Assembly (NCBI RefSeq): GCF_001194135.2
Contig: NC_068989.1
Coordinates: forward strand, 16,914,269 to 16,978,265
DNA from: Octopus bimaculoides
Taxonomy: Eukaryota
Direction of reading: 5' to 3'
Length of the DNA: 63,997 nt
Every line of letters begins with the position of its first letter. Position 1 is the stretch's first letter. The translations under genes and the position numbers were made by a program. The notes under the pieces were generated by a model, which saw only the letters and a list, made by a program, of their open reading frames with translations, made no database searches and was not told the DNA's origin. This document shows, one piece after another, positions 5,527-61,300 of this stretch.

Positions 5527-6290
5527 ATCCTCTTAAGATCCAAGAGATGTATCAGTATATAATCGATTATGGTTCAGTTTTTTTTCTTGCATATCATGGG
5601 ACTCTGTTAACATGTGTGGAAAAAATGAGGTTTAGATATTTTTTCTATTTTACCACCATAACGCTCGTTGCGGAATAGGTCCTCCCAAAGAGACGCACAT
5701 CTTGTCATCGATAAAGATATTTCTAGTTTAATTTTAAGAGAGATAATTAGGACCAGGAAAGCTAATCGCTTAATTGTTGACAGTTTCAATCCAATTTTCC
5801 TTGTCCCATTAAAGCTGTTTCGGATGAAATCAAACAAGTGTGGAACACCGACTTTAAAACGTGTAGGTCACTGTATGTTATTCATAAATATTAGCGTTCA
5901 TCCTAACATGAGATAATCGCTACACAAATATATACAGATCAGTTGAAGTTATAAAGATTAATAAATTACTGATGCGATAAAAGCATTTTGTTTCAATGCT
6001 ATTTCATACTATAAGAGTACGAAGTAGGCGGTGTCATTGGCAATATGATACCGGTGACATAAGTTAAATGTACCTAATAAAAATACAACTTCTTGATAGG
6101 GCCAAATCGTAATCACCGCTGTTGAAAACATAGGAATCTGAAGAAATTCTTGGAAAAATAAAAATAACAGAGGTAGATGCTTTGTATTGTAGATAGTATC
6201 TGTACGTGACATATGGTGGAAGCAATAAAGTTTGACAAATGAAAGGTTTACGAAATCAAAAGGATGTATGAAGATATATTGTTGCGTAGT

Positions 6291-6677
6291 GGAGGTGCAA
6301 TGGCCCAGTACTTAGGGCAGCGGACTCGCGGTCACAGGATCGCGGTTTCGATTCCCAGACCGGGCGTTGTGAGTGTTTATTGAGTGAAAACACCTAAAGC
6401 TCTACGAGGCTCCGGCCGGGGGTGATGGCGAACCCTGCTGTACTCTTTCACCATAAATTTTCTCTCACTCTTTCTTCCTGTTTCTGTTGTGCCTGTATTT
6501 CAAAGGGCCAGCTTTGTCACACTCTGTGTCATGCTGAATCTCCCTGAGAACTACATTAAGGGTACACGTGTCTGTGGATTGCTCAGCCACTTGCACGTTA
6601 ATTTCACGAGCAGGCTGTTCCGTTGATCGGATCAACTGGAACCCTCGTCGTCGTAACCGACAGAGTGCGTAACAACA
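6291..6677 (+). repeat. tRNA-derived SINE family A, full length
   Basis: A box TGGCCCAGT, B box GGTTTCGATTCCC, (CAA)-type tail; several near-identical copies in the window. Confidence 0.9.
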
Positions 6678-7099
6678 GATCACAATGAAAAGGTGGACGA
6701 GACAGGAACTCTTCGTGTATCATACGTGAAGTTACTTACTCCCACTAGGCTGGTGGAGCTAATAAGGGAAATATTACCTTTATATACTTGTTGCTTTGAG
6801 TTTAAATTCATTGGGTTCAAAGAAAAATGCTTCCAACCTCTAGGAGTGACATCACTAAACACAGTTGACTTTCCTTTCATCTATGTGTGTGTATTTTAAG
6901 TTTAGGGCGTATGATAATTTTAGACAAAAGATAGTCAATGTCAAAAAGAAAAAGAAAATATACCAATGGCCACAGACGGCCGTACTTGATGTCCTAGAAT
7001 GCCACATGCGGCCTTAAGGTTTAGACCTTGACTTTGGAAAAGATAGCAAGGACTCCACTAAGCATGCTTGTATTTATTTACTGATTGTTTTACTTGATT

Positions 7100-7260
7100 A
7101 ACATCGTCTTTCACAGGCGCCTAAGAAGATAGAAGGTGATCGAATGATTTAGAGGTAACTCGTGAGGGTGCTTAGTTGTTCCAGCGCATCAGCCTCACCA
7201 TCACCCGTGGCAACGCTGCAAGCGTGTTGGCGTGCCTCAAAAGTCATCCCCAAAATTTCC
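7100..7260 (+). mobile_element. CRE/RLE-clade non-LTR element C-terminal remnant
   Basis: REGA*LFQRISLTITRGNAASVLAC resembles the FQRLSIAIQRGNAASVLG terminus of CRE-like elements. Confidence 0.6.
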
Positions 7261-7536
7261 AACTTAAGGTGGTCAATTGTTTTTGTTTTTTCTTCTTCTC
7301 ACTCTTATGTATATATTTAAGTATAAGTAAAACTTATATACATAACTTAGGGTATAACTACAGCAATTCACAATGTAAGATAAATTAGTTTGTGGTAAAA
7401 AGAAAAGTCTGATGTTTTTAGCAGGCCCTTCCTTTCGCAGACAAAGGATCCCTTTCTCTTATTCATCGTAACAAAACTACGTGCTTCGTCGGATCCTGTA
7501 GTCTCGCGTTTAAATTAGAGCGTTTATTTGTTACCT

Positions 7537-7806: not shown

Positions 7807-20144
<12,338 letters not shown>

Positions 20145-20167
20145 GTTAGTTAGCAGATACCTTAAAT

Positions 20168-20726
20168 CATCATCATCATCGTTTAACGTCCGCTTTCCAT
20201 GCTAGCATGGGTTGGACGATTTGACTGAGGACTGGTGAAACCGGATGGCAACACCAGGCTCCAATCTGATTTGGCAGAGTTTCTACAGCTGGATGCCCTT
20301 CCTAACACCAACCACTCAGAGAGTGTAGAGGGTGCTTTTACGTGTCACCTGTACGAAGGCCAGTCAGGCGGTACTGGCAACGGCCACGCTCAAAATGGTG
20401 TATTTTATGTGCTACTCGCACAAGAGCCAGTCCAGGGGCACTGGCAACGATCTCGCTCGAAAATCCTACGAAGGCCAGTCAGGCGGTACTGGCAACGGCC
20501 ACGCTCAAAATGGTGTATTTTATGTGCCACTCGCACAAGAGCCAGTCCAGGGGCACTGGCAACGATCTCACTCGAAAATCCTACGAAGGCCAGTCAGGCG
20601 GTACTGGCAACGGCCATGCTCAAAATGGTGTATTTTATATGCCACTCACACAAGAGCCAGTCCAGGGGCACTGGCAACGATCTCACTCGAAAATCCTACG
20701 AAGGCCAGTCAGGCGGTACTGGCAAC
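20168..20726 (-). repeat. Family D copy with internal 115-bp tandem array
   Basis: Units start at 20354, 20469, 20584 and 20699 (partial). Confidence 0.9.
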
Positions 20727-21691: not shown

Positions 21692-24261
21692 ACACATACA
21701 TACATACATATGTATCATGGATAGAAGTCTAATCAAAGCATGTTTCTGTTTTCCCCAGCTAGAAAGGAAAGAATATAAGGTGTTAGCAAATTTTGTGTGC
21801 AAGGGATGCATGAGGAAAATTCATCTTCATAGTATTCAGTCCTATTAAGTAAGAGTACTTAAAGTGAGAAGGGAGACAGAAATTGTCCAAATAAATTCAT
21901 AGAGTTCTCGAGAAGGTCAATGCTTGCTGGAAAGCTTACAGTGTTTCAGCTTGACAACCTTTCAATGTAGTTCATATTACTAGAATCCATTCAGTCCATT
22001 CAGATAATACCTAAAAGACAACAGAATTCAACTTTTTTTTACTTGCCTTCTTTCCTCATCCAGTCTATATTCTCCCTTGTACCTTGTGAGTATACTGTAG
22101 CATCCTGTCACCAGCACCTTTATCTTCCTTCCAGTGACTCTCATTCACCCTTGCATAATGTAGGGGAAGCCATGTATCTCCTTTATAGTAAGACGCCTAC
22201 ACTTTTCCTTCTATCATATTTTAGCCTTGAACATCTTGCATAAAGCAGCCATCTATCCCTCTCTCAAATACATGCCCACTCAGATGAGCAAGTTTTTTTC
22301 ATTCCCATTCTTTATTTTGTCTTATAAGTTATTTGGTGATCTCAGTAGTGCCAGTGTCATGAAAAAAAAAAAAATAGCACCCAGTACATACTGTAAAGTG
22401 GTTGGCGTTAGGAAAGGAATCCAGCCATAGAACCCATGCCAAAGCTGACATTGGGGTCTGCTGCAGTGCAATGGCATGTCAGAGCCTGTCAAACCATCCA
22501 ACCCATGACAGCATGGAAAATAGACATTAAATGATGATGATGATGATGAAATTTGAGAGAAAATAAAGGTTTGAATCAGTATGTATAGACATCTTTTAGA
22601 ATATAGAGACATGAACTTCTTTGATGTTGGCTGAGATAGCAAATGATTCTATAAGTTGTAATTATTTAACTAATCAGAACCAGTTTTAATCATGATGCTC
22701 ACTGGGTTCTGACTCTGAATGCATGCTAGTGATAATATATATATATATATATATATATANNNNNNNNNNNNNNNNNNNNNNNNNNNNNNNNNNNNNNNNN
22801 NNNNNNNNNNNNNNNNNNNNNNNNNNNNNNNNNNNNNNNNNNNNNNNNNNNNNNNNNNNNNNNNNNNNNNNNNNNNNNNNNNNNNNNNNNNNNNNNNNNN
22901 NNNNNNNNNNNNNNNNNNNNNNNNNNNNNNNNNNNNNNNNNNNNNNNNNNNNNNNNNNNNNNNNNNNNNNNNNNNNNNNNNNNNNNNNNNNNNNNNNNNN
23001 NNNNNNNNNNNNNNNNNNNNNNNNNNNNNNNNNNNNNNNNNNNNNNNNNNNNNNNNNNNNNNNNNNNNNNNNNNNNNNNNNNNNNNNNNNNNNNNNNNNN
23101 NNNNNNNNNNNNNNNNNNNNNNNNNNNNNNNNNNNNNNNNNNNNNNNNNNNNNNNNNNNNNNNNNNNNNNNNNNNNNNNNNNNNNNNNNNNNNNNNNNNN
23201 NNNNNNNNNNNNNNNNNNNNNNNNNNNNNNNNNNNNNNNNNNNNNNNNNNNNNNNNNNNNNNNNNNNNNNNNNNNNNNNNNNNNNNNNNNNNNNNNNNNN
23301 NNNNNNNNNNNNNNNNNNNNNNNNNNNNNNNNNNNNNNNNNNNNNNNNNNNNNNNNNNNNNNNNNNNNNNNNNNNNNNNNNNNNNNNNNNNNNNNNNNNN
23401 NNNNNNNNNNNNNNNNNNNNNNNNNNNNNNNNNNNNNNNNNNNNNNNNNNNNNNNNNNNNNNNNNNNNNNNNNNNNNNNNNNNNNNNNNNNNNNNNNNNN
23501 NNNNNNNNNNNNNNNNNNNNNNNNNNNNNNNNNNNNNNNNNNNNNNNNNNATAACCAGACATTGAAATATATTACAAGGTAATAGGCTTTTTGTTTATAA
23601 TAATAATAATTATAACGGTTTCAAATTTTGGCACAAGGCCAGTAATTTTGGGGAAAGGGTGAGTCAATTACCCCCCCCCCCGTGCTCAACTGGTACTCAC
23701 TTTATTGAGCCCCAGAAAGAAGAAAGGTAAAGTTGACTTTGGTAGAATTTGAACTCAGAATGTAAAGACAGATGAAATGCTGCTATGCATTTCGCCCAGC
23801 ATACTAACAATAATAATAATAATAATAATCCATTCTACTAAAGGCACAAAGTCTGAAATTTCGGTGGAGGGGACTAGTCAATTACATTGACCCCCAGTGT
23901 TTTACTGGTATCTAATTTATTGACTCTGAAAGGATGAAAGGCAAAGTTGACCTTAGCGGAATTTGAACTCAAAATGTGAAGATGGATGAAATACCACAAA
24001 CCATTTTGCCCAGCATACTAACAGTTCTGCCAGCTTGCTGGTCTACTCAACCTGAAGAAAATTCTAACTGGGTCCCACCGCAAGGCTATGTGCTGTTTAT
24101 CTTGATATGAGATCACCATGTTGCACACATATAGTTGTGATACGCGTGCCTGGTGTACCCTTATCAGACAAGTATTCATGGTGGGTATATTGGGTTTCAT
24201 TTGTACCCCATTGTCACTTTGATGGCATGCATTGCTCTCTCATTCAATAATACAATACTCT

Positions 24262-24645
24262 TTTACTCTTTTACTTGTTTCAGTCATTTGACTGTGGCCA
24301 TACTGGAGCACCGCCTTTAGTCGAGCAAGTCGACCCCAGAACTTATTCTTTGTAAGCCTAGTACTTATTCTATCGGTCTCTTTTGCCGAACCGCTAAGTT
24401 ACGGGGACATAAACACACCAGCATCGGTTGTCAAGCGATGTTGGGGGGACAAACACAGACACACAAACATATACACACACTTACATATATACAACGGGCT
24501 TCTTTCAGTTTCCGTCTACCAAATCCACTTACAAGGCTTTGGGTGGCCCGAGGCTATAGTAGAAGACACTTGCCCAAGGTGCCACGCAGTGGGACTAAAC
24601 CCGGAACCATGTGGGTCATAAGCAAGCTACTTACCACACAGCCAC
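24262..24645 (-). repeat. SINE family B
   Basis: Reverse-complement copy. Confidence 0.9.
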
Positions 24646-32900: not shown

Positions 32901-35900
32901 ATATAGAGACTTGTTCACAATCTTTTGATTTTATTGATAAAACTCTTTTTATCATTTTATTGAAAAAAAAACTAATAAAAAAAATTAAATAAAAACAAAC
33001 TAGAATTTGAGGAAATTAACAAAGTTTGTATTGACAAAATCAAAATCAACAGAATTTACAAAAGAACATGAATCTGTGTTGTGTGAGGAGAGTTCTGAGA
33101 TTTCTGCTAGAGTCACTGAATAAAGAAAAAATATGTATGAGTTCTATCAATTTGTTTGTTAACTATAAAGCAGTATAAAGGTTGTATGATATGTGTAAAT
33201 GAACAAATTTTAAGAATCAGCCAATACATATAAATACAGTGTAAACATAAACAATTATCAAGCTACTACTTACCTTGGTTTGTTATGGATTCAGGTTCTC
33301 CAATGTAGACTAAAGCTAAATCAAGCTGCACCTGGTATTGGTAAAATGATTAATGGTTTATGTTATAAATATATTCACAATGTGATCATCATCATCATCA
33401 TCATCATCATCGTTTAACGTCAGCTTTCCATGCTAGCATGCGCTGGACGATTTGACTGAGGACTGGTGAACCAGTGATTCGGCAGAGTTTCTACAGCTGG
33501 ATGCCCTTCCTAACACTAACCACTCAGAGAGTGTAGTGGGTGCTTTTACGTGTCACCCGCATGAAGGCCAGTCAGGCGGTACTGGCAATGGCCACGCTCA
33601 AAATGGTGTATTTTATGTGCCACCCGCACAAGAGCCAGTCCAGGGGCACTGGCAACGATCTCGCTCGAAAGTCCTTACACATGCCGCGGGCATAGAAATG
33701 TACAAATTAAACCGTCTGTCAGTATGACTGCATGCAAGTATGTATGTGTGTATGTATGTATGTATGTATGTATGTATGTATGCATGTATGTAGGTATGCA
33801 TGTACGTACATATGTATGTATGTGTATCGGAGTGATCAAAATATCAGAATACCAAAAGCTTGAAAGACTGAATATTCAGAATGCTAAATTTTAAAATATT
33901 TTAGACATAAATATGAAAATCAGCATTAAAAAGCAATTATTTACAGTTTTAAAATATTATATATTTAAGAAACATTGTAGCAGATTCATTATTTTTTTTA
34001 TTATGCGACATAAAAATAACTATTTTAGAATATAACAAAATGTTTTAAAAACTGTTTATTTGAGAAACAGAAAATATTAGTTTTTTTTAATGCTACATCA
34101 GTACAATTATTTTATGGGAAAACAAGAGGTAAAATGGTTTTTAGAAACATTTCTTTACAGTTTTAACATGGAATTTTAGAAACATTTTATAACATCTACT
34201 GCTTTTATTATGCTATGTCAAAATATATAATAAAAGTGTATTGTAGGGATCCAATATCACAGCTATAAGTGAAAACTTCAATAGTTTATTTATAGAATAT
34301 TTCCTTTTTTAAATTTTCTTATTAAATATTTTCCTTTTTCTTTTCATAACCTTTGGAATGTGAAGTACTTCTCATGACTTCAGGTCAGCGAGATAGTTGT
34401 GACTTGTAAACAAATTCTTAATACCTCTTTTCAAATATTGTATAACATCTCTTACGCACTCCCTTTGTATCTTGTAAATGTGTTTTTTTCATGCTTCACA
34501 TTATCCTTTCTTTTTGGTAACCCCTAGTAAAACTTCCATATTTTTTGTAACTCTTAGATCTCTTGTGGTTAATAAAGAAAAGATTATTACTACTGTTTTT
34601 ATCATTATATGGTAGGAAGCATATTTAATGGACTTAGCATTTAATGAGAAAGATTAAATATGGATAATGAAATAGACTTACCTGTGGAGTGAATGCATAC
34701 TTGTAGAGTTTGAAGTGTCTAAAATATGTGTTAATCATATGGAAAGATATCTTCCTTACTTCACCCAGTGTAAACAATTCAGTACTAAATGGTGGACACT
34801 AAAATATGAACAAATAAATGTGTCATGGCCAGTTGTTGTTTAGCAAACCAATAATCAGATGCATTCTAGCTATGATGACTGATTATTATTCAGGGCATTT
34901 AGGGGTACATTACACTGTGTAATACGATTTTTGTCTTTGGAGATCAACTGTTATTTCCTATTTGCTTACCCCTAGAAAGTATGCAAAAAAGGACTAATAT
35001 TTCCTCCAAACTTTGCTTTTCTTACATTTATTCAAACCCCAAAGAATCCCTCTCAAGACATGGCTATGATGCTCCCCTACTACTCCTGTTCATGATCAGA
35101 GATGCACATATTATCAGCCACTAAAGGACATGCTCAAGTGGTTATGGTCAAGCAAATGACAAGCAAATCTGTGGTATTGAGCAGAATATTTACTATAATG
35201 ATATTTCTGCTTCAGCAGCGCAGCACTGAATCTGCCTGAAGTGTAATGGAATATAGGTCAGTTTCAAAACATTGATGTTCAGGACACAAAAGCAAGGGAG
35301 TAGTAGTCATTTCCTTTGATTTCTAGATAGAAGCAAATAGGAAATAACACTTACTGACCAAAAACAAAAACAATAAAAAATTTTGTTATACAGTGTTATC
35401 CAATGTGTTCGGTCTTCTTTAAAATGGTAAGGGAAGTCTTTATAGTGTCACAAAAATTACTAGAAATAGTTGCCAAATATTCCCCCGATTCCATACTACC
35501 ATCTTAGAAAATGGATACATTGGAAAAATTGCCATAGAAACACTACATCTAAATAACTGGAACATCTTTGGTTATATCAATGGATCAATGTTTACATGAG
35601 TTTAAACAACAACTACAACAATTGTACGAATTACTCAGTATCACGACTAAATTGTAACAGAACAGCTGTCAACATGTTGAAACATCAACCTTATCTAGTT
35701 GGCCCTATTTTCCAGCTTAGAAATAAGGGGGAATTTTCCTCATCCTTTGACTAAATTATAATCACTGTGAAGGTGCATGGCTCAGTGGTTAGAACATCAG
35801 ACTTGCAATCATGAGGCAGTGAGTTTGCTTCCTGGACTGGACTGTGTGTTGTGTTCTTGAGCACGTCACTCTATTTTGCGTTGCTCCAATTCACTCAGCT

Positions 35901-37253
35901 GTAGAAATGAGTTGCGACATTTACTGGTGCCAAGATGTATCAGTGTTTGCTTTTTATCCTTTTTAATCACTGAAAGTGACATGATGACTAGTGTTGGAGT
36001 CAATATGAAGTAAATATAAGATTCCTACATACACATACATCCACTAAGATATATACACATAAATACATAGAAGTGTTAATACATACATATTTACTATATA
36101 TATATATATATATATNNNNNNNNNNNNNNNNNNNNNNNNNNNNNNNNNNNNNNNNNNNNNNNNNNNNNNNNNNNNNNNNNNNNNNNNNNNNNNNNNNNNN
36201 NNNNNNNNNNNNNNNNNNNNNNNNNNNNNNNNNNNNNNNNNNNNNNNNNNNNNNNNNNNNNNNNNNNNNNNNNNNNNNNNNNNNNNNNNNNNNNNNNNNN
36301 NNNNNNNNNNNNNNNNNNNNNNNNNNNNNNNNNNNNNNNNNNNNNNNNNNNNNNNNNNNNNNNNNNNNNNNNNNNNNNNNNNNNNNNNNNNNNNNNNNNN
36401 NNNNNNNNNNNNNNNNNNNNNNNNNNNNNNNNNNNNNNNNNNNNNNNNNNNNNNNNNNNNNNNNNNNNNNNNNNNNNNNNNNNNNNNNNNNNNNNNNNNN
36501 NNNNNNNNNNNNNNNNNNNNNNNNNNNNNNNNNNNNNNNNNNNNNNNNNNNNNNNNNNNNNNNNNNNNNNNNNNNNNNNNNNNNNNNNNNNNNNNNNNNN
36601 NNNNNNNNNNNNNNNNNNNNNNNNNNNNNNNNNNNNNNNNNNNNNNNNNNNNNNNNNNNNNNNNNNNNNNNNNNNNNNNNNNNNNNNNNNNNNNNNNNNN
36701 NNNNNNNNNNNNNNNNNNNNNNNNNNNNNNNNNNNNNNNNNNNNNNNNNNNNNNNNNNNNNNNNNNNNNNNNNNNNNNNNNNNNNNNNNNNNNNNNNNNN
36801 NNNNNNNNNNNNNNNNNNNNNNNNNNNNNNNNNNNNNNNNNNNNNNNNNNNNNNNNNNNNNNNNNNNNNNNNNNNNNNNNNNNNNNNNNNNNNNNNNNNN
36901 NNNNNNNNNNNNNNNNNNNNNNNNNNNNNNNNNNNNNNNNNNNNNNNNNNNNNNNNNNNNNNNNNNNNNNNNNNNNNNNNNNNNNNNNNNNNNNNNNNNN
37001 NNNNNNNNNNNNNNNNNNNNNNNNNNNNNNCTTGTGTGGGTGGCATATAAAAGACACCATTTCGAGCGTGGCCGTTTTCGTGCGGGTGACACGTAAAAGC
37101 ACCCACTACACCCTCTGAGTGGTTGGCGTTAGGAAGGGCATCCAGCTGTAGAAACTCTGCCAAATTAGATTGGAGCCTGGTGTAGCCATCTGGTTGCACC
37201 AGTCCTCAGTCAAATCGTCCAACCCATGCTAGCATGGAAAGCGGACGTTAAAC

Positions 37254-37284
<31 letters not shown>

Positions 37285-40200: not shown

Positions 40201-43200
40201 GTAAATTCACCCCCACACATAACACTCATATACATACCTCCATGATTAACATACACCCTTGTATATCGCTCCTATCTACCTAACCTTAGAACTCTATAAG
40301 ATAAATGTTAATTCTTTAATTTATTTTAAAACTTGAACCTATTAAATCCCCTAATATTTATTTGTAACTCTTATAATCCTTAATAATTTAATATTCAACT
40401 GGTTTCTCCATTCACAACTACCTACACACTCATACCCTCATAGATAGAAATATTTCTACAGCCACTGACTTAAGCCATAAAACAGACACAAACACTTACT
40501 ACTAGATTTCCTCCCCAACCTCTACAGACTAGAAGAATACCACTGGCACCTACTATTCTCATTAAATCCCTTTCATTTTACTTTTTGTCTTTTTCACATT
40601 ATCTTCCTCTACCTCCTCTTCCTCTCTCCATATTTACCCTTATATATTTATTTATTTATCTTCTTGGTTATTTTTGTAAACTATATTCTTATATACCTTA
40701 TTTTATCCTTAATACAAATCTTTGTTTTCTTCTCCCACTCTCTCTATCTCTCTTCCTATTTATTTATTTTTCTTTCTCTTTATCCCTTAATAGCCACCTC
40801 TGCTACCACTCTCTTATGGAACGTTGATATGTTCGCATTTATTTCTGGATATTTACACTATTAAGACTTTAACCTATATGAATTTACACAGAGGATTGTA
40901 CCTAAGGACTTATGGACTGACATCTACACAATCGGAAAGTTGAATTGGGAACTTTTATGTTTCTTTTTTCTTCTCTTACTTTTGTTTCTTCACCTCCTTA
41001 TTCCTTTTCTCCTGTCCTTTATGTTGTCGTTTCATTAATCTATACCCTTCTCATTTTCCCTATTTGTCTCTGATGACAGAATATCTCATATTTTAGGATG
41101 TCCCAGAAACAGCTGTAAGATTTTGAATTTTTCCAATAATAATAATAACGTATATGATTTGAGATGTTTGTCTTGCCTTAACGTTTGTTGTCCTCTTTAA
41201 CAATTATATATATATATATATAATTTCTCCTTCTTTTTCGTCTTTTTCTTTTTACTTATATTTTATTTACTTTTCTGCTCTGATGAAGTTTCATGATTCA
41301 ATTTGGTATAACTAATCATCTACAATGATAACTATAATTACTATTATAGTGGCGGTTAGAGCTGAGAATCATGCTAACAGAAACAGCTGTAAGTCGAGGA
41401 TGTAAATCAATTGTTATCCATTTTCTGTTTTCCTTTGAACTACGTTCTTAACAGAATATACTATAACTATTGTTGTAGTGAAAATGGTACACTCTTTCCC
41501 ATGTGACAAAGTGGTATGACTCAGCCACTATAAAGTCAGACAGTCAGTTGTTGTAGGTCAGTAGTAGTAGATTCATTGTGTGAGTTCTCAGTTGGAGTCA
41601 GTACCAGTTACATGATATATATGAGTTCGAGTTACTGTCAAGCTGAGATTTTGAACTTATGGAGACAATATCTACATATCACCTGAGGAAACACAACTAG
41701 ATCTCATAATGCAGGGAAGCGGTTGCATAATCAAGTACCTGCACACCTGGAGAACTACATTTTGTGGAAACAATTTTAGTGATTAAAAAATAAATGTCCA
41801 ACTGTATTCCTTGTAGACCCCAATTTTTTTCAACTCTCTCTCTCTCTCTCTATATATATATATCTGGTATTGGGATTTATAGTACTGGCCACTATGTGTG
41901 TTTGTGTGACGGTCCCAAATGCATCTTTGATATTGGGACTGTGTGTGTCTGGAACACTGTATGTATCTAGTATATCTGGTATTTATAAGACTATTTTTAA
42001 GTGTGTGATCATCCCAAATAGTCATGTGATTCTGGGGCCATATGTGTATATGGTTGGCATTAATATATCTGTCGTACTGGAACTGTATATGTGTAGTGTT
42101 TGTCTCCAATGCTGGGACTGTAATATATATTACTGTCCAACCTTGTCCATTTTAATGTCTAACCAAGAATAATTAACAACAAAAATAATATCAAAAACAA
42201 AATCTATAAAAAAGATACAAGTTCTGTCTATATCTTGAATACTGATTATTTAACCAGGATCATGCACAGTAGACTTACTTGTACAGAATTCATGAGCATC
42301 TTTCACAATGGAAAAGTAGGTAGACAACTTATCAATTGTGAAGTCTTCATCCCTTGCATATTGTAATGTATATGTGTATAGGTTGAGCAGAATTGCTTCT
42401 CTGAGATCTTCTGCATAATTGGTGAGATTGAAGATTTCAGCAAGGATACTAAAACCACACAGAAAGCAGAATTGAAGAAGAAAATATTATTAAAATAACT
42501 TTGAAAAGCAATTTTATAATCTCAAAAATATATCTCTTGTTCTGTTTGGAGTTTACTAACTAACAGTGTTTTGATGTCTCTTGCAGAGTAACATGGTATG
42601 GTAACCTATTATCTTATTTTACCCAGATACACTTATGATCTAAGAGTCTTAAGAGAATTTTCTAGAAATGGTATAAAATGTAAACAATGTATGTGTAGTG
42701 AAACTACCTATCGTCACTAGATACAAAACTGCTAACGCGAATGTAGCGGAAAACATTAACCTTGTCATCACGTGACTGATCATTATTCGAATCGGCAACT
42801 TCTTTGAACCGTTCCCGCCAGAACGCAAACTGACCAATCACAGCCCTTAATAAGGTCACGTGATAGTGTTTTCCTACTACCGTCTTGGAGCCCTCTTAAC
42901 GCTTTAAATAGAACAACTCATATCCAGCAAATTTGTCTCGGTCCAGTTTCTCTTTGAGATCTGTTCCGTGTACCACACGACAGCAGCAGCAACAATCAGC
43001 CAGCGACCACTTCAACAGCTTCGTCCAGCCAACGATGACCACTGCCGTCGCCACATCAGCGACACGATTCTACGATTACTACTAACCAGCGTCAATCTCC
43101 ACCAGCGTCTACACGACTTTCTATGTACACCANNNNNNNNNNNNNNNNNNNNNNNNNNNNNNNNNNNNNNNNNNNNNNNNNNNNNNNNNNNNNNNNNNNN

Positions 43201-46200
43201 NNNNNNNNNNNNNNNNNNNNNNNNNNNNNNNNNNNNNNNNNNNNNNNNNNNNNNNNNNNNNNNNNNNNNNNNNNNNNNNNNNNNNNNNNNNNNNNNNNNN
43301 NNNNNNNNNNNNNNNNNNNNNNNNNNNNNNNATACTATTGGGTACACAAGAACTGGTATAATTGCTCACGTGTTATTGACTCTCTTTCTATCTGCTGTAA
43401 TAACTCACATACACACACATGTATCACTCACATACATACTTTTCTTTGTATGAGGGCCTGTCTTTGATTATGTTATTATATGTCACATTCACACTCTCAC
43501 ACAGACATACATCTTTAACGCTACAATAAATATTTCTGTTATTCATCTTATACGGTTGTGGTCTTTCATTACTGGTCATCTATGTTATCGTCGTATAACA
43601 TATCATGTATATCATCATTGATATATATAATTTTGTGTTCGACCGTGTGACATGTTTAAATAAAAGGAGTCCTCTGTTTTTCCATTCGTCACCATTTCTC
43701 CTTTTTGAGTTCGCACGGTCGTTCCTTACAAATGTATCAATAAACGACAACTACACCGTACACGGATCAATTTTAAATTTCGGAGAAGCATTTAATCACG
43801 ATAAACCGAAAGGATCAAACTTCACATGGGATGGTTGTCTAGACGTAACAACTGCACCACAACTCGGAGTAGAAGGAAATGTACACGGTGAATCGGTAGG
43901 CGAAACGAGAAAAAGAAAACGACAGTTCTGGAAAGAAGATTTAAATTACACAGAATACGGAGACTGATCACCATAACCTAGTTAAAGACGCAAACGGCAA
44001 TATGGTTCCCGCCAGTGGAAACATGGTTACGGCAAACAGAACAGTCATTAACAAAGTCCTATATACATCGGAAGACTCGCCAGAAATGATACTCATCAAC
44101 GTGCCACAGATCGTCAGACCCACGGTAGCAGCGCACAACAATACTTTGCATTCGATATCACGTACACCATAACACTAGACGCATACTACGAAGCTATGCA
44201 ACATCCGCAAAAAGTAGCCACCATATGCCACAAGGCAGCTGAGAACACTACTTATCCAGGATTTGAATATAATCTATTCTGCGCTACACCACCTTGCAGA
44301 CACTTGAACAATCTCCCGCCAAAAGGGAAACGGCACGGGAGAACTACTTACATAGATGCGGATTCAGCTGGCGACAAGGCACTTAAAAATTGTTCAGGAC
44401 ACTTTGTAAACAAGTAAGTAGACAGCGCTTGCCTGTCACTTGCTAATCACCTTCCAGGCCCTAAACACTATAAATACACACAGGCAACAGTGACAGCCAG
44501 CAGTCATGGACACACCAGTCAACAACTTCAACATGAGCGAGAACGACGACAAAAATACATTCGACCAGGCAGTGAAGTCGGAAGAGTTGAAACCATACAC
44601 GTGGGTGTACAGACTCAGAGATGAGAACGAGATAACTTGGGATGAGACGATCACCATCAGCGCAGCGACAGACACCTTCACACACGACTACACGCCGCAG
44701 ACAAATTATTTCATGAACATTCTATCGAAACATCCCAACATAACGATATTTCACAAGCGTTCCATTTCGGCGATAAAACATTGCTACGACAGACCACACT
44801 TTCACGTAATATCATGGCATAAAGACCATCCGACAAACCTACATAGCTTTTCACAACTTAAAAATTTGTTAAAAAAACGACCTCGGAAAACTGTACAACA
44901 TGGCAGCTATGAAGCTATTCACACCATATGGATTCGCAAACTACCTAAACAAAGACAGCTCCATCAGATGGGTAGTATCTGCTGACAACATCAAAACACT
45001 CGGACAAAAGATGATGTATGAAAAGCTCACATGCAAATCATTGAATACAACAACAAATTACTCACAGGAATCAGACGAAGACAAACAACTCATTAACAAC
45101 AAGACTGTAAGAGGATCTAAATATGATTTTATTAAGAAAATCATGCNNNNNNNNNNNNNNNNNNNNNNNNNNNNNNNNNNNNNNNNNNNNNNNNNNNNNN
45201 NNNNNNNNNNNNNNNNNNNNNNNNNNNNNNNNNNNNNNNNNCCAACATAGAAGCACTTTCTACACCGATCTGGGAACAGATTAGGCAAAAAAAAGACTAT
45301 TTTCAATCAAATGCAAACAATTACCATAATATCCAAAGATCGTTAGACATTTACGAAGAATGGCTAACACACTACAATATTGACGCTGATAATTTCTCCA
45401 AACACACATTCGAGGTTTGTCATAAGATAAACCCGAAAGTTAACGGGCTGCACATAACCGGAGTTTCCAATTCTGGGAAGAGCTATATACTACGTTCGAT
45501 AAGAAACGGATTGATCAACTGTGGACGCATGCGATGTCAGGCATCGGACAACTTTACATTTGGTTCCTGCGTAGACAAAACAATCATTTATACTGACAAA
45601 ATTATTATGGATATCAAAGCAGCTCCTCTTTAAACTGAAAAACTATGAAATACTGAGACAAAACAATATGCCAAGATGAATCTGCAGAAATGCCAATATG
45701 ATGAGATATAATTTTCAACAACAGATACTTACGTTTTCACATTTTGCAGTGTTAGGGCATCCTTAAGTGCTTGTGATTGGTCTGGGTCCAAGTCTTTCCT
45801 GTAGTTATTTCATTATAAACAACAAAAGACAAATATATTACTCAACAAGCTTCAAACTATTTCACTTTCATATGAAATTATTTCTACAAAACTAAATTCT
45901 CTGTTTAAATATTATTTGAATAAATTATGAAGGTAATTTTTTTTTTATATAAGTTACTTTTAAATCTTTAAGTATGACAACTTATTTCTTCTGTATTGTA
46001 GTGGCATAAAGGGAGTCAAATCAGAAGAAGGTGTTGTGGTGATCATTCATTTACCAAGATTCATCATCATCATCATCATCGTTTAACGTCCGCTTTCCAT
46101 GCTAGCATGGGTTGGACGATTTGACTGAGGACTGGTGAAACCGGATGGCAACACCAGGCTCCAGTCTGATTTGGCAGAGTTTCTACAGCTGGATGCCCTT

Positions 46201-46972
46201 CCTAACGCCAACCACTCAGAGAGTGTAGTGGGTGCTTTTACGTGTCACCCGCACGATACGTGTCAACAGAAATTTATTTGTCAAATCTATTTCAGATACA
46301 TACTTAATGCCGTCCTGTTAAATGTAGAGGGAGATATTCTAAACCCTTCAGAGATATTCTAAACCCTTAACATCAATTTTTATTAGAGAAAAAAAAAACA
46401 AAAAATCAGTTTTTGCTCTAAAATCACCTAAAAACACCTTTAAAAAGTGCCAAAACTATAAAATCCATTAACTTCAATTGCAACTTGATTTAACGGAAGT
46501 TAAATGTAACAGAAGTTAATTAGTCCGATAATGATTTCCAAAGTTAACTTAAAAGTTAAATTGTTAACGAAAATGTTTACTTCATTAATTAATTACAGGT
46601 GCATGAGTGGCTGTGTGGTAAGTAGCTTGCTTACCAACCACATGGTTCTGGGTTCAGTCCCACTGCTTGTCACCTTGGGTAAGTGTCTTCTACTGTAGCC
46701 TTGGGCCAACCAAAGCCTTGTGAGTGAATTTGGTAGACGGAAACTGAAAGAAGCCNNNNNNNNNNNNNNNNNNNNNNNNNNNNNNNNNNNNNNNNNNNNN
46801 NNNNNNNNNNNNNNNNNNNNNNNNNNNNNNNNNNNNNNNNNNNNNNNNNNNNNNNNNNNNNNNNNNNNNNNNNNNNNNNNNNNNNNNNNNNNNNNNNNNN
46901 NNNNNNNNNNNNNNNNNNNNNNNNNNNNNNNNNNNNNNNNNNNNNNNNNNNNNNNNNNNNNNNNNNNNNNNN

Positions 46973-47005
<33 letters not shown>

Positions 47006-50000
47006 AAAGTTTGTGTGTCTGTATTTGTCCCCCCAACTTCGCTTGACAACTGATGCTGGTGTGTTTACGTCCCCGTAACTTAGCAGTTCGGCAAAAAGAG
47101 ACCGATAGAATAAGTACTAGGCTTAGAAAGAATAAGTCCTGGGGTCGATTTGCTTGACTAAAGGCGGTGCCCCAGCATGGCCACAGTCAAATGACTGAAA
47201 CAAGTAAAAGAGTAATGATTAACAGATTAAGTTTGGTGCCCAGGTTTGTTTCTAAAGGTATTTTTAGGTGGTTTTAGAGCAAAGACTGATTTTTTGTTCT
47301 TTTTTTCTATAATAAAAATGAATGTTAAGGGTTTATTCATAACTGACGTTACATTTTTAAAGAATTAACTGATTAATGGTTATCAAATTAACTGATTAAC
47401 GGTTGATGGCTAATGTTAGTGATGATGCTTGGTATGATGGTGATAATAGATAGGCGATAGGTACCTCTGTAGAAAGACAAATGACCACCTGTCAGAAAGA
47501 TTGTGAGGAAGCTTCAAAGGGAAAGACATCACATATGTGCATGTGCATGCAACCTTCACCCTTCTCACACGCACAAAAGTACTGATGATAAATAAATACA
47601 TACTAAAGGTTGGTAATAGTACCAACTGTGATGGTAATAACTAATGGTAGGAACGAAAAATAGCAGTTATGCTGGTGGTGATGATACAGAAAATAAAATA
47701 ATAAAAGTGTATGTATGCATTAGTGAATTTTATTTTTTTAAAAGTTTCATTTAAAAATGTTTCTCATTTGCATCACATGGATCCCACAAGAGCTGGACCG
47801 AATGAATCTGTCCCCACTACCACTGGCTACACCTGTGGGTGTTGTGGCAGTGTGTATTGGCATTGTAGTGTCTGCGTGTTTTGTTGTAGTGAGAGCGTGT
47901 ATTGTCGTATGTATTACTGTTGTGAAGTATGTACTGGTGGAGGTTATGTTTTGTTGGTGTAATATCTGTCTATTGGTCTTGGTCAAGTAATGACTGTGTG
48001 CATTAGTGATGTAGGGGCTGTTTATGAGTGTTGTAGTGGTTATGTGTATTGTTGCTGTAGTTGTGCTCCGGTTAGTATGTAGGTGATGTGTATGGGTAGT
48101 TGGTGTGGTAGCTGTGTTTTCCTGCGTTGTTGATGTCTTTAGATGTGACTGAGGTGTTACTATGACTGTCTGTTTGGTTAGAGTAATAGAACCTTTTTAG
48201 AATTAGATGCTGATATCATCTTACTTACCAAATGACTACCTTGATCCCCAGTTTTGGAGGCTGGAGAAAAAGAAATAATTAATGTATTATTTTAATTATT
48301 CGAGTATCTAAGAACAACGTTTTAGAGATGACATTTATAAATAACATGCATATGGATGAAGACAGCTGAATAAAGAAGTTTTAATTGTGGAGGGTACCTG
48401 TGGAAGGGGTAGATCCAGAAAGACACGGGATGAAGTGGTGAGAAAGGGTCTTCAGATGCTGGGCCTCACAGAGGAAATGACAAAGGACAAGGATTTTATT
48501 CAACATATTCCCCTTCTCAAATTCATACAGTTATTGCAGCAGTCCTTCAATTTTTCTAAACCCTCTAGAAGAACTCGGATGATTAAGCCGCCAATCAGGC
48601 CTTTTGCAATACTTATAAGGTCAGAAACTTTTCAGCGAACCCTCATATGTGCATGTTTGTAGACACATATAAATATACCGTTTATATGAATCCCAATATC
48701 AACAGTAATATTATGATATTTATGCTTTTTTAGTCATCAGCAAAGTTGACCATTATTATCAAGAATCACAATGTATCATTCATAATACCAATATTCCAAG
48801 AATTAACAAATATTTTAATATAGTTAACAGCAACAAAGGTGAAACAGCTATCAGTTTGAGGGAAATTCCTTCATTACAATAGATTTTTACACTGGCATAA
48901 TGCCAAAATTATATAAAGAGTGGGGGTGAGTACTTAAATGATTGATAAACAATATATTATTGGTGCTTAACTTGTTGAATCCTGGATGGATGAAGAGGAT
49001 ACATGAATGTAATAAAACAAAACTAAACACTACAGGGCTGGCAATTTACTGACTCTAGCATTTACTACTACTAACAACAACAACAACAACAATAATGATA
49101 ATAGTAATAATGGTTTCAAATTTTGGCAAAAGGGCAACAATTTTAGGGGAGGGGATGAGTCGATTACATTGACCCCAGTGTTCAAGTGGTACTTATTTTA
49201 TTGATACTAAAAGAATGAAAGGCAAAGTTGACCTTGGTGGAATTTGAACTCAGAACATGAAAATAGATGAAATGCTGCTAAGCATTTTGCCTGGCATGCT
49301 AACGATTCTGCCAGCTCGCCTTATCAGTATCATTATTCATCATCATCATCATCATCACCATCATCATCGTTTAACGTCCGCTTTCTATGCTAGCATGGGT
49401 TGGACGACTTGACTGAGGACTGGTGAAACCGGATGGCAACACCAGGCTCCAATCTAAATTTGGCAGAGTTTCTACAGCTGGATGCCCTTCCTAACGCCAA
49501 CCACTCAGAGAGTGTAGTAGGTGCTTATTATTAAACAATAATCCCATGTCAGATTTGTCTTGCAAATAGCAGCCTTATTGGACACAGCACACATCTTAAG
49601 GAAAGTATCATCTGTCCGAGGTCCTTGAAGTGACTTTTTTTAAATAGCATAAATATGTTTATGGCGAGAAAAATATTCTTTACTCTAGGCACAAGGCCCG
49701 AAATTTTTTGGGGAGGGGGTCCAGTCGATTAGATCGACCCCAGTATGCAACTGGTACTTGATTTATCGACCCCGAAAGGATGAAAGGCAAAGTCGACTTC
49801 GACGGAATTTGAACTCAGAACGTAAAGAGAGATGAAATACCGCTAAGCATTTCGCCTGGCATGCTAACGTTTCTGGCAGCTCACCGCCTTATGACGAGAA
49901 AAATATTGAAAAACGTCAATACATGTAAGAGTGACAAAGAAAATGGGGAAGGTGGTCGTGGGATGTGCTAGAAACAAAAGCCAAATCTCCCTTAAGTCAC

Positions 50001-51391: not shown

Positions 51392-51785
51392 TATACTCTT
51401 TTACTTGTTTCAGTCACTTGATTGCGACCGTGCTGGAGCACCGCCTTTAGTCGAGCAAATCGACCTCAGGACCTATTCTTTGTAAGCCTAGTACTTATTC
51501 TATCAGTCTCTTTGGCTGGACCGCTAAGTTACGGGAACGTAAACACCCCAGCATCGGTTGTCAAGTGATGTTGGGGGACAAACAAACGCACAAACATATA
51601 CACACACGTATATATATATACATATATACGACGGGCTTCTTTCAGTTTCCATCTAACAAATCCACTCACAAGGCTTTGGTCGGCCCGATACTATAGTAGA
51701 AGACACTTGCCCAAAGTGCCATGCAATGGGTCTGAACCCGGAACCATGTGGCTAGTAAGCAAGCTACTTACCACACAGCCACTCC
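51392..51785 (-). repeat. SINE family B
   Basis: Reverse-complement copy. Confidence 0.9.
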
Positions 51786-58300: not shown

Positions 58301-61300
58301 ATTCTTTGGAAGTCTAGTACTTATTCTATCGGTCTCTTTTTGCCGAACCGCTAAGTTACGGGGACGTAAACACACCAGCATCGGTTGTCAAGCGATGGTG
58401 GGGGGACAAACACAGACACACAAACACATATATATATACATATATACGACGGGCTTCTTTCAGTTTCCGTCTACCAAATCCACTCACAAGGCTTTGGTTG
58501 GCCCGAGGCTATAGTAGAAGACACTTCCCCAAGGTGCCATGTAGTGGGACTGAACTCGGAACCATGTGGTTGGTAAGCAAGCTACTTACCACACAGCCAC
58601 TCATGCACCTATGAATAATGTAAATATATAATTTAAATATATGGTCAACAGTCAGAAAAATTACTTCTGAATCTATTCAAGATGTTGATAAAATACCTTT
58701 CTCAGAAATCAAGGCCAACTCCTTGTCATTGATAGCGTTTTCGACCACTGCTTGTACAATTTCAGTTTCACATTTCCCTTTCTTCTCCTTTAGAGAATCA
58801 ACTTGTATTTCTTCATTTGAAAAAGAAAAAGGAACATGGTAAAAATTGTCATGAAGACAGTTGGCTTACTCCTCATTTACATCTGTTTTCTCCAAGTGAA
58901 CACCTTTCAAATGAATATTATTAATAATAATAGTAATAAACCTATTGTATACAGTGCTCAAATGCACTACAACTCACCAGAAAAAAGTAACCAAAACTGC
59001 ATGAACAGTACATAGAATATGCACAGGAAGTGAACAGTGAATAAATCTTAACAGAAAAAAACAGGCTTAGTGGGCATCAGGTGTACTGTTGGTGAAATTC
59101 AGGAATCATGGACGTTGCCAGTGCTGCTGGACTGGCTCCTGTGCAGGTGGCACATAAAAAATAACATTTTGAGCATGACCGTTGCCAGTACCGCCTGACT
59201 GGCCTTCGTGCTGGTGGCACGTAAAAGCACACACTACACTCTTGGAGTGTTTGGCGTTAGGAAGGGCATCCAGCTGTAGAAACTCTGCCAGATCAGATTG
59301 GAGCCTAGTGCAGCCATCTGGTTCACCAGTCCTCAGTCAAATCGTCCAACCCATGATGATGATGATGACGATGATGATCATGATGGAAGTTTTGAAGGAT
59401 GCAATGTCCTGACAGATAACTGATGCAGGTAGTTTATTCCAGGCTTCAGCAAAATTTAACCTAGTCTCAATTTTGTTTTTATTTATGCCTGTTTTTGTTT
59501 TCTTATAAACTGACACCATTGTCATGTGCTAGAAGGAATAACTTGATGTTGTATAACAACAGTATTACTGTATATAAAAGTACAAAGTAGTAAATTATGA
59601 AATTTGTGAATAATTGTAATGAAGTTTCTTCTTCTAACTTCATGTCCTAGTCAATAGTTGGAACGAGTACAACTCAGTTATCAATTACCTGAAGGTTAAT
59701 ACAATATTAAATCACAAAAATCATAAAGTCAAATATCATTAGTCAAATTTACATATACAAACTTGGCTGCACTTCTCCATCACTTTGATACAGGTTTCTG
59801 TACAGAACACCTTGGTCATGTGATTCTACCATAACATCAAAATAACACAATGTTTTTGAGATAAACTGGACAGAAACTGTTGTCAAAAAAACGGTACTTG
59901 TTCTTATTCTGTACACTTAACCCATTAACCAGTTTGATGTCACTACATAACCTTGGATATCGTAGCAGAGTTCATACTGTTGAAAATGTTTAGAGCAGAT
60001 CTCAGTATGATATTTAGTCCTTCCTGCAGTAGCAATATATGTATAGGAAAGTTGGTTATACATCATTAGATGTATACCTGACTTTCCTATATAAAATTAG
60101 GAAATATAATGGAACACTGAACTCCAGACATTCAACTTATACAACACTTTATTTAGGTGGTAAATATATACATCTTTAGCTCTTGTTGTTACAGCTTCTG
60201 TGTGTGTGAGTATAGTTGTTGGGACGTTGTTATGTAGATGTGAGCGAGCTGTCGAGTGTAAGTCCGAAAGATGGAGGGTGACAGCTATACACGTAAAGAG
60301 ACTGTCTCCAGAGTTGGGATGTTGGAGACACTGATTGACACGTCTATGCTCTATTGCTGGCCAGCAAGAAAGATATAGAATTAAGCGGGAAAGCTTGCTT
60401 GTTTAATTCCACGCATGCGCACGGCGTTACTACATATGTGTCTTATTTTAGCAGAGTTCATATTGTTGTAAACATTCAGTCAGTCTCAATATACTGTTGT
60501 GATCCTTCTTACTGTCACAACCTGTAAGTCATATTTCGGTAGAGTCCACTCTGTTATAAACATTTAGAGTAGGTCTCTCTATATTTTGCACCTTCCTATA
60601 ATAGCGTCTGTGTGTCATGATTTCTTCCACCCTTACCTAACATTCTTAGAAACCCTATAACTGTTATGTGTTCTGCCCTTCGTCTCTATATTATGCTTTT
60701 TCCTAAAATAGTGACTGTGACATGGTTTCTTTAATCATTATCCAATGTTCTTAGAAGCCCTGTTACTGTTATATGTGCTACTCTTCATCCTCTGATTAAA
60801 TCATAAAAGAAGAAGCATTCCATTGATCAATCTTCAATACACAAAGACACTGACCCTTAAAATATCATTGATACAGAAAAAAAAAAAGTATCTGAGGAAA
60901 CTAATGATGGTTTGTATTGGCTAAAACAAAATTGATAAAATTTATAAAATGACATAAATCTATGTATCTTAAGGAGAGGTGAGTTCTAAGTTTTATAAGG
61001 GACGCCTTGTATAAAGAAAAAATACTCATGAACCGCTATCATTTCATAGTTAACTACAAAGTTAACTATAAAGGTTGTATCATTTTTGCAATTTATAGAA
61101 TCAGCCAATACTTATTTACTATGGTGAAAACATAAACAATTGCTCCTTACCTTGGCTTGTCATGGATTCAGATTCTCCAATGTAGTTTAAAGCTAAATCA
61201 AGCTGCACCTGGTATTGGTAAAATGATTAACAGTTCACAGTAAAATATATTCATAACTTAATGTATGTAGAAATGCACAGTTAAACTATCTGCCAATCCA

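What the first reader, a model, noticed from the sequence alone, without database searches (positions are those of the whole stretch)
44506..45633. Endogenous parvovirus-like Rep/NS1 (HUH plus SF3 helicase) in a probable cephalopod genome
Seen: HUH motif PHFHV, YxxK motif YLNK and a Walker A GVSNSGKS / Walker B-like IIYTD(K) pair about 40 aa apart, on one strand and in the right order once a frameshift and an N gap are bridged. The ORF track misses the helicase part (45244-45633, no start codon). Established: this architecture defines parvoviral NS1 and CRESS Reps, whereas Helitrons use an SF1 helicase. Inference: a fossil of an invertebrate ssDNA virus lineage; the Walker B E-to-K change and truncation before motif C imply inactivity. 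Parvovirus-related fossils are known from invertebrate genomes, so novelty depends on the phylogeny.
Basis: partly seen in the sequence, partly recalled or inferred. Interest (0 to 1): 0.85.

Follow-up and report, generated by a model that had tools for sequence, protein, structure and literature searches.

The report
Octopus-type genome parvovirus fossil, capsid-first
This is a dead, truncated piece of a parvovirus-like virus (end of the capsid gene plus the first 70% of the replication gene) embedded in an animal genome; it belongs to an undescribed multi-copy family whose gene order, capsid before replicase, is the reverse of that of classified parvoviruses.

Summary
PHFHV, YLNK, GVSNSGKS and IIYTD lie on one strand in the stated order. 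The helicase piece reaches Pfam Parvo_NS1 exactly at its cut-off, and aligns Walker A to Walker B with AAV Rep40. Relatives, 58-90% identical, exist only as unnamed short contigs from sequencing runs; their fuller copies hit Parvo_NS1 at about 1e-15.

The two sides of the N gap match consecutive parts of one NS1, so they are colinear. Frame across the gap cannot be known.

Intact relatives encode a VP1 of about 610 aa with a PLA2 domain, followed by an NS1 of about 520 aa. Every locus examined, including seven or more outgroup lineages from metagenomes, has capsid before NS1 co-directionally. This is non-canonical for Parvoviridae.

NS1 homology stops within two codons of the Walker B aspartate, where a host interspersed repeat begins. 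The "E-to-K" may therefore be junction sequence rather than a mutation.

The HUH nuclease is supported only by invariant motifs; structure models failed. The host taxon could not be tested.

Verdict: a genuine, inactive parvoviral EVE. The window copy is ordinary; its lineage is an interesting variant.

The parts
43332..43709 (.). Left flank: non-viral sequence between an assembly gap (43133-43331) and the element
   Evidence: It has no match to VP or NS1 proteins and no repeat copy elsewhere in the window.
43710..44417 (+). Capsid (VP1) gene remnant: the C-terminal ~40% only, ending at the VP stop codon
   Evidence: tblastn with intact relatives' VP1 (P0022-P0026, 606-621 aa) matches their residues ~360-608 (E to 1e-32). 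Breaks: 5' truncation (the first ~60%, including the PLA2 domain, is absent), at least 2 frameshifts, and no stop codon inside the homologous blocks.
44418..44505 (+). VP-NS1 spacer (88 nt) with a TATAAA 37 nt upstream of the NS1 ATG
   Evidence: Read directly from the sequence. A TATA-like motif within 80 nt upstream of the NS1 ATG is also present in L015, L009 and L001, but not in L014. A promoter role is inferred, not tested.
44506..45603 (+). NS1/Rep gene remnant: residues ~4-383 of a ~520-530-aa protein. It holds the putative HUH nuclease region, the linker, and the SF3 helicase up to Walker B. It includes the assembly gap at 45147-45241.
   Evidence: Homology evidence:
- Matches to intact NS1 of L014 and L015 at E = 1e-54 to 3e-55 for the helicase part.
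- Pfam Parvo_NS1 at 3.7e-4.
- The alignment to AAV Rep40 runs from Walker A to Walker B.

Motifs: PHFHV at 44794-44808, PYG...YLNK ending at 44953, GVSNSGKS at 45460-45483, IIYTD at 45583-45597.

Breaks: 1 frameshift; no stop inside the homologous blocks; 1 assembly gap hiding ~48 codons; 3' truncation that loses motifs B', C and the C-terminal ~28%.
45610..45942 (.). Host interspersed repeat that starts right after the NS1 homology ends
   Evidence: 73% identical over 355 nt to window 10235-10587 on the opposite strand. It lies in the same gap-free stretch (45242-46755) as the helicase piece.
46061..46256 (.). SINE-like host repeat downstream, preceded by a (CAT)n run
   Evidence: At least 9 copies in the window at 75-97% identity. 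It links the helicase block to host-type DNA.

Best explanation
Window 43710-45603 is an endogenous viral element: an internal ~1.9-kb fragment of a parvovirus-like ssDNA genome fixed in animal chromosomal DNA and now non-functional. It keeps the last ~40% of the capsid gene, the short spacer with a TATA-like motif, and the first ~72% of NS1.

Intact relatives show what the source virus encoded. First came a VP1 of ~610 aa whose N-terminus carries a phospholipase A2 domain; in known parvoviruses this domain is used for endosomal escape. Then, on the same strand, came an NS1 of ~520 aa with an N-terminal His-hydrophobic-His region (putative origin-nicking nuclease) and a C-terminal SF3 helicase with Walker A, B, B' and C.

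Shown here: homology, the architecture of relatives, truncation at both ends, the frameshifts and the junction with host repeats.

Inferred: integration by non-homologous recombination of a genome fragment, nuclease activity of the N-terminal region in the ancestor, and absence of any present function.

The capsid-first, co-directional order appears to be the native order of the lineage. It recurs in independent insertions and in free-standing ~4-kb metagenomic contigs of outgroup lineages.
For: Parvoviral helicase:
- The window piece hits Parvo_NS1 at 3.7e-4.
- Relatives hit it at 1e-14 to 5e-17.
- A profile of the family hits only AAV Rep40/68 (1.5e-10) and a parvoviral NS1 (3e-3) in the PDB.

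Capsid:
- VP1 of relatives passes the Pfam PLA2 cut-off (4e-8 to 3e-7), with FLGPG and HDxxY motifs.
- The window's upstream ORFs match the VP C-terminus.

Gene order:
- VP is followed by NS1 on one strand in L001, L003-L007, L010, L014-L016 and the window.
- The same holds in outgroups L017/L025, L020, L022, L026, L027 and L018/19.
- A normal ambisense densovirus contig (L034) served as a control and was picked up correctly.

Host linkage:
- The helicase piece is contiguous, without gaps, with a host repeat and a SINE-like repeat present 9 or more times in the window.
- Relatives' flanks are AT-rich and unique per locus. Orthologous flanks are 99.7-100% identical across independent sequencing runs.

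Decay: 3 or more frameshifts in total, and both genes truncated.
Against: - The block holding the VP remnant and the NS1 N-terminus (43332-45146) is bounded by N gaps on both sides. Its link to the host rests on scaffolding plus 378 nt of unidentified flank.
- No orthologue of this particular insertion was found, so fixation and age are unknown.
- No terminal hairpins or repeats were found in any relative. A linear parvovirus-type genome is therefore not shown, and a circular genome linearised at a preferred site is not excluded.
- The nuclease fold is unverified.
- Within the homologous blocks there are no stop codons, and differences from relatives are biased to third codon positions. Decay since insertion is modest.
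Confidence: 0.85

Rival explanations
1. The fragment is not inert. Its 159-aa N-terminal ORF, which has its own ATG and a TATA-like motif, or transcripts of the locus, are used by the host, for example as a truncated Rep-like protein or as a template for antiviral small RNAs.
For: - An open 159-aa ORF with a start codon, and TATAAA 37 nt upstream.
- No stop codons inside the homologous blocks.
- Differences biased to third codon positions.
- Some relatives keep both ORFs intact.
Against: - The gene is frameshifted and lacks the helicase core beyond Walker B.
- The codon-position bias is equally explained by divergence before insertion.
- There are no expression data, and no conserved orthologue was found.
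Confidence: 0.08
2. The family is a parvovirus-derived mobile element that multiplies inside the genome, and this is one dead copy, rather than one of many independent germline infections.
For: - There are many copies per host: at least four distinct loci in the samples that share L003.
- About 15 close clusters at 50% identity.
- An HUH protein could in principle mobilise DNA.
Against: - Copies within one sample are only ~64-72% identical in DNA. This does not fit a recent burst.
- No terminal repeats were seen.
- DNA homology between copies stops at the coding region.
- Every fuller copy retains a capsid gene with a PLA2 domain, which a transposon would not need.
- Target-site duplications were not looked for.
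Confidence: 0.05
3. The viral sequence is a contaminant or a mis-scaffolded contig from an exogenous virus present in the sequenced tissue.
For: The N-terminal block is bounded by N gaps on both sides. Intact relatives sit on short ~4-kb contigs.
Against: - The helicase piece continues without a gap into host repeats.
- The copy is truncated at both ends and frameshifted.
- Both blocks are colinear with relatives, on the same strand and in the right order.
Confidence: 0.03
4. It is a Rep of a CRESS-DNA virus, or a Helitron-type or other HUH element, rather than a parvoviral NS1.
For: The HUH plus SF3 architecture is shared with CRESS Reps. No terminal hairpins were seen.
Against: - Only parvoviral NS1/Rep was hit in Pfam and the PDB, with the papillomavirus E1 helicase as a weaker SF3 hit.
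- The partner gene is a ~610-aa VP1 with a parvoviral PLA2 domain.
- Outgroup capsids touch the IHHNV capsid model.
- There is no SF1 helicase.
Confidence: 0.02

Closest known systems
Parvoviridae NS1/Rep; solved representative AAV2 Rep40/Rep68 (PDB 1s9h, 1u0j, 7jsi)
   Same: The SF3 helicase has Walker A, B, B' and C in the same order and spacing. A full relative matches Rep40 at E = 5.8e-7, and the family profile at 1.5e-10. An N-terminal His-hydrophobic-His motif precedes the helicase.
   Different: Identity is low and confined to the helicase. The N-terminal domain gives no sequence match to any solved nuclease domain. NS1 lies downstream of the capsid gene instead of upstream.
Unclassified metagenomic parvo-like viruses: Turdus hortulorum parvoviridae sp. 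(QTE03882.1), Motacilla cinerea parvoviridae sp. (QTE03847.1) and Pot worm parvo-like virus 2 (WPR17604.1), plus unnamed ~4-kb contigs (L017, L020, L022, L025-L027)
   Same: They are the nearest helicases outside the family, at 110-146 bits against 166 or more within it. The unnamed contigs also have a capsid-like ORF upstream of NS1 on the same strand.
   Different: Their capsid ORFs are shorter (434-468 aa) and show no PLA2 hit. L026 is an exception, with a 674-aa ORF. They are free-standing contigs, not shown to be integrated. The gene order of the three named viruses was not seen here.
IHHNV (penstylhamaparvovirus of shrimp) and its endogenous copies in Penaeus monodon
   Same: It is an invertebrate parvovirus known both as a virus and as genome-integrated, hairpin-less fragments (PMC11357303). 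Capsids of the outgroup contigs touch the Pfam IHHNV_capsid model (1.8e-5 to 5e-3, just below cut-off). They also align with the family's VP over one shared block.
   Different: IHHNV has NS genes first and VP last, and lacks PLA2 (PMC11357303). The family here has VP first and carries PLA2.
Parvovirus-related sequences reported in Octopus bimaculoides (Francois et al. 2016, PMC5013282)
   Same: Parvoviral helicase-like sequences were already recorded in a cephalopod genome assembly and protein set.
   Different: The helicase fragment printed there (KOF81493) differs clearly from this family's highly conserved Walker A-to-B stretch. That study described no capsid gene, gene order or intact copies.
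Ambisense densoviruses (Densovirinae)
   Same: They are invertebrate parvoviruses with a PLA2-bearing VP1. One such contig (L034, Denso_VP4 plus PLA2) turned up as a distant NS1 relative.
   Different: In them, VP is on the opposite strand. The family's VP does not hit Denso_VP4.

Membership tests
Parvoviridae-type NS1 (Pfam Parvo_NS1, SF3 helicase) | Match to the Parvo_NS1 profile at or above its curated cut-off | tested here: met
   The window piece scores 20.0 bits against a cut-off of 20, E = 3.7e-4. Relatives score 53-62 bits.
Parvoviridae-type NS1 (Pfam Parvo_NS1, SF3 helicase) | Complete SF3 motif set: Walker A, B, B' and C | tested here: not met
   The window copy has only Walker A and the Walker B aspartate. 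B', C and the rest are absent because the gene is truncated. Intact relatives have all four.
Parvoviridae-type NS1 (Pfam Parvo_NS1, SF3 helicase) | N-terminal HUH (rolling-circle) nuclease domain with motif II (HUH) and motif III (catalytic Tyr) | tested here: inconclusive
   Both His of H-F/Y-H are invariant in five natural sequences, and PYG...Y is conserved. However, the K of YLNK is Q in two of five relatives. There is no Pfam or PDB match, hhalign to the outgroup N-termini gives only E = 0.004, and the AlphaFold model has pLDDT 33.
Parvoviridae (family-level genome features) | VP1 with an N-terminal PLA2 domain (present in some subfamilies) | tested here: met
   Met for relatives: PF08398 at 31-34 bits against a cut-off of 23.9, with FLGPG and HDxxY motifs. 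The window remnant lacks this part of VP.
Parvoviridae (family-level genome features) | Jelly-roll capsid core | tested here: inconclusive
   The family's VP has no Pfam capsid hit, and its model has pLDDT 35. The link is indirect: outgroup capsids touch IHHNV_capsid below cut-off and align to the family's VP at E = 5e-5 to 1e-3.
Parvoviridae (family-level genome features) | Canonical gene order: NS upstream of VP, or the two on opposite strands | tested here: not met
   VP lies upstream of NS1 on the same strand in the window and in all 10 or more family loci, and in 7 or more outgroup loci.
Parvoviridae (family-level genome features) | Linear ssDNA genome with terminal hairpins | tested here: inconclusive
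   No terminal inverted or direct repeats were found in L014-L018 or L020. Short-read contigs and endogenous copies usually lack termini, so this absence says little.
Endogenous viral element | Virus-derived sequence physically continuous with host DNA | tested here: met
   The 3' side is gap-free from the helicase into host repeats. The 5' block is joined only through N gaps. The window holds a host C2H2 zinc-finger gene.
Endogenous viral element | Same insertion present in independent individuals or species (germline fixation) | not tested
   No exact or orthologous copy of the window's insertion was retrievable. For relatives the feature is met: L001/L002 and L003-L007 share flanks at 99.7-100% identity across runs.
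CRESS-DNA virus Rep | Match to CRESS Rep profiles or structures; circular genome with a small capsid gene | tested here: not met
   No CRESS Rep family or chain appeared among the Pfam or PDB hits. The partner gene is a ~610-aa PLA2-bearing VP1. No terminal overlap was seen on contigs.
Helitron | RepHel protein with an SF1 (Pif1-like) helicase | tested here: not met
   The helicase is SF3 (Parvo_NS1, with a weaker hit to papillomavirus E1).
Named parvovirus subfamilies (Parvovirinae, Densovirinae, Hamavirinae, Penbrevirinae, Hepanvirinae, Metallovirinae) | Monophyly with the subfamily in an NS1/SF3 phylogeny | not testable with these tools
   No named reference NS1 sequences could be drawn from the tools, apart from PDB chains and three unclassified viruses.
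Cephalopod host | Window or relatives assigned to a cephalopod species | not testable with these tools
   All relatives come from Logan assemblies of runs whose organism the tools do not give. Paper searches for the run accessions found nothing.

The most novel reading that the evidence does not exclude
The fossil marks an unclassified, deep (genus- to subfamily-level) parvovirus lineage with a capsid-first, co-directional genome and a PLA2-bearing VP1. This VP1 sits in a clade whose other capsids are short, IHHNV-like and lack PLA2. The lineage has entered the germline of its molluscan hosts many times. Some copies still have both reading frames intact, which means either very recent endogenisation from viruses that still circulate or retention by the host.
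Probability: 0.45. Interest if true: 0.7.

Novelty: new variant of a known kind. Interest (0 to 1): 0.55.

Why it matters
Parvoviral fossils in invertebrate genomes are known, and one more truncated copy is ordinary. What is less expected is the lineage behind it.

Across independent insertions and free-standing metagenomic contigs, the capsid gene precedes NS1 on the same strand. The literature read here describes NS-then-VP as canonical for the family (PMC13426907). If the capsid-first order is confirmed, it widens the accepted range of parvovirus genome plans.

The lineage would also add a further PLA2-bearing group. That same paper describes PLA2 as limited to two subfamilies plus one transfer.

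Finally, it provides dated-in-principle markers of virus-mollusc association, including copies with intact genes whose status (recent, retained or circulating) is open.

Tried and rejected
- **Structure route.** AlphaFold2 of VP1 (9-sequence alignment) gave pLDDT 35, with only the PLA2 helices moderate. The model of the uninterrupted N-terminal relative P0020 gave pLDDT 33. Fold searches were not run, because such models give meaningless matches.
- **Sequence route for the nuclease.** Pfam, PHROGs and the PDB gave nothing for the N-terminal region, whether single sequences or a 5-sequence profile were used.
- **IMG/VR scans.** Scans with the family's and the outgroups' helicase alignments found no relatives.
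- **Exact-sequence look-ups.** Look-ups of the window's NS1 ORF and its zinc-finger ORF found nothing, so the source assembly and species stay unknown.
- **Other searches.** Rfam gave no match in the window. Paper searches for run or assembly accessions, for cephalopod parvoviral EVEs and for capsid-first parvoviruses found nothing relevant beyond Francois 2016. All ten searches are used, so absence from the literature is not established.
- **Rejected reading.** The idea that a transposon split NS1 and the rest lies downstream is rejected. No further NS1 or VP match exists anywhere in the window at E < 0.1.
- **Not done by rule.** The frames were not joined, and no consensus of the family was built. 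align_proteins and protein comparison print consensus lines on their own; these were not used, copied or saved.
Full report
**Observation.**
- PHFHV at 44794-44808
- YLNK at 44942-44953
- GVSNSGKS at 45460-45483
- IIYTD at 45583-45597

The Walker A lysine lies 39 residues before the Walker B aspartate. The helicase stretch has no start codon because its frame runs out of the N gap.

**Gap, tested first.** The sequence left of the gap ends at about residue 215 of intact relatives' NS1. The sequence right of it starts at about residue 264, on the same strand and in the right order. At DNA level a contiguous relative (L009) matches both sides with similar spacing. The 95 N thus stand for roughly 110-145 nt. 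The sides are colinear, but the frame across the gap cannot be known. An uninterrupted relative (P0020) spans the two frames upstream of the gap, so the frameshift is real.

**What the helicase is.**
- The 129-aa window piece reaches Pfam Parvo_NS1 exactly at its cut-off: 20 bits, E = 3.7e-4.
- Its best PDB alignment, to AAV Rep40, runs from Walker A to Walker B.
- Fuller relatives score 53-62 bits on Parvo_NS1. One matches Rep40 at 5.8e-7.
- A profile of the family hits only AAV Rep40/68 (1.5e-10) and a parvoviral NS1 (3e-3) among all PDB sequences.
- No CRESS Rep and no SF1 helicase appears.

**The family.**
- Nineteen relatives of the helicase piece (58-90% identity) and one of the N-terminal ORF were found. 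All are unnamed and come from Logan assemblies of sequencing runs.
- Their contigs show degraded copies (L001-L013) and copies with intact genes:
  - L014: VP1 of 608 aa, then NS1 of 517 aa.
  - L015: VP1 of 621 aa, then NS1 of 530 aa.
  - L016: VP1 of 606 aa, followed by a shorter called NS1 gene of 370 aa.
- VP1 passes the Pfam cut-off for the parvoviral PLA2 domain and has FLGPG and HDxxY motifs.
- Copies differ by about 30% in DNA. Their homology stops at the coding region, and their flanks are AT-rich and unique. Orthologous flanks are 99.7-100% identical between independent runs. These are germline insertions.
- Differences among intact copies, and between the window pieces and those copies, are concentrated at third codon positions. 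Most divergence therefore happened under coding constraint.

- Directly upstream on the same strand, 43710-44417 matches the last ~40% of VP1 up to its stop codon.
- An 88-nt spacer follows, with TATAAA 37 nt before the NS1 ATG. A similar motif is seen in three of four relatives checked.
- The window thus holds an internal genome fragment, VP 3' end to NS1 5' part.

**Break counts.**

| Gene | 5' truncation | 3' truncation | Frameshifts | Stops in homologous blocks | Assembly gaps |
|---|---|---|---|---|---|
| VP | yes | no | at least 2 | 0 | 0 |
| NS1 | no | yes | 1 | 0 | 1 |

The NS1 truncation removes motifs B', C and the C-terminal ~28%.

**Ends and host junction.**
- NS1 homology ends at 45597-45603.
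- At 45610 a host interspersed repeat begins, with a copy at 10235-10587.
- A SINE-like repeat with 9 or more copies in the window follows at 46061-46256. Both lie in a gap-free stretch together with the helicase.
- The lysine after IIYTD therefore sits within two codons of the junction, and need not be an E-to-K mutation.
- No further NS1 or VP sequence exists in the window.
- The window also carries an intact 526-aa C2H2 zinc-finger gene.

**Gene order beyond the family.**
- A profile search of 1.84 billion representatives gave 1153 hits. About 15 are close (166 bits or more), followed by a drop to 146 bits.
- The named neighbours are unclassified: two bird-associated 'Parvoviridae sp.' and Pot worm parvo-like virus 2.
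- Outgroup contigs of ~4 kb (L017/L025, L020, L022, L026, L027, L018/19) also place a capsid-like ORF upstream of NS1 on the same strand.
- Those ORFs touch the IHHNV capsid model just below its cut-off. They align to the family's VP over one shared block.
- A distant hit, L034, is an ordinary ambisense densovirus. This shows the census detects canonical layouts when they are present.
- No terminal repeats were seen on any contig. A linear genome with hairpins is therefore not shown, and a circular one is not excluded.

**Nuclease.** The two histidines of the H-F/Y-H motif and several neighbouring residues are invariant in five natural sequences, and a PYG...Y block follows about 40 residues later. 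The K of YLNK is Q in two of five relatives. No profile or structural confirmation was obtained. The HUH assignment is reasonable but rests on motif-level evidence only.

**Literature.**
- Francois et al. 2016 already listed parvovirus-related sequences in Octopus bimaculoides, with a different helicase sequence.
- A 2026 paper describes NS-then-VP as canonical for the family, lists six subfamilies, and describes PLA2 as limited to two subfamilies plus one transfer.
That the canonical order has no known exception is my own knowledge, not a test.

**Verdict.** This is a genuine, inactive parvoviral fossil. The window copy is ordinary. Its lineage is a likely new variant, being capsid-first and PLA2-bearing with some intact endogenous copies. 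Host identity as a cephalopod is plausible but untested here.

Noticed in passing
window 3946-5526 (-): Intact 526-aa single-exon ORF made almost entirely of C2H2 zinc fingers (14 or more; Pfam zf-C2H2 at 3e-96). It is a host gene 38 kb from the element.
   Followed up: partly
window 46061-46256, 13583-13778, 37078-37273, 20166-20356, 14088-14268, 49349-49526, 33392-33564, 59206-59355: SINE-like ~196-nt repeat, 85-97% identical between copies, preceded by a (CAT)n run at 46066. Two weaker copies (74-76%) lie at 2060-2211 and 22373-22549. It translates into spurious ORFs in the ORF list.
   Followed up: partly
window 46588-46755, 58452-58619, 24497-24645, 51634-51784, 19401-19520: A second interspersed repeat family (84-93% identity). 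One copy abuts the assembly gap at 46756.
   Followed up: no
window 20352-20726: Tandem repeat of a 115-nt unit, 3.3 copies at 98% match, next to a SINE-like copy. It is open in all three + frames.
   Followed up: partly
L028 (Ga0224511_10013220) 4228-7425: A 7.6-kb metagenomic contig with a 1066-aa ORF carrying a Parvo_NS1 helicase (2e-14). This is about twice the usual NS1 length. Two unassigned ORFs (370 and 509 aa) lie upstream on the same strand.
   Followed up: no
L026 (JAAUYG010294627.1) 462-2483: Outgroup contig whose upstream ORF is 674 aa and gives the best outgroup match to the family's VP profile (1e-8), without a Pfam PLA2 hit. It may be the nearest link between the short IHHNV-like capsids and the long VP1 of the family.
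   Followed up: partly
L003-L007 (five sequencing runs): This degraded copy has 52% G+C, against 39-43% in the other copies and ~33% in its 5' flank. One run (L007) has a longer open VP frame (559 aa against 444 aa).
   Followed up: no
L017 1731-2375, L025 1832-2476, L020 1871-2497, L022 1398-2204, L027 1782-2693, L018 1746-2501: The outgroup contigs share an extra 200-300-aa ORF that overlaps the 5' part of NS1 in another frame. Its position resembles that of an NS2-type accessory gene.
   Followed up: no
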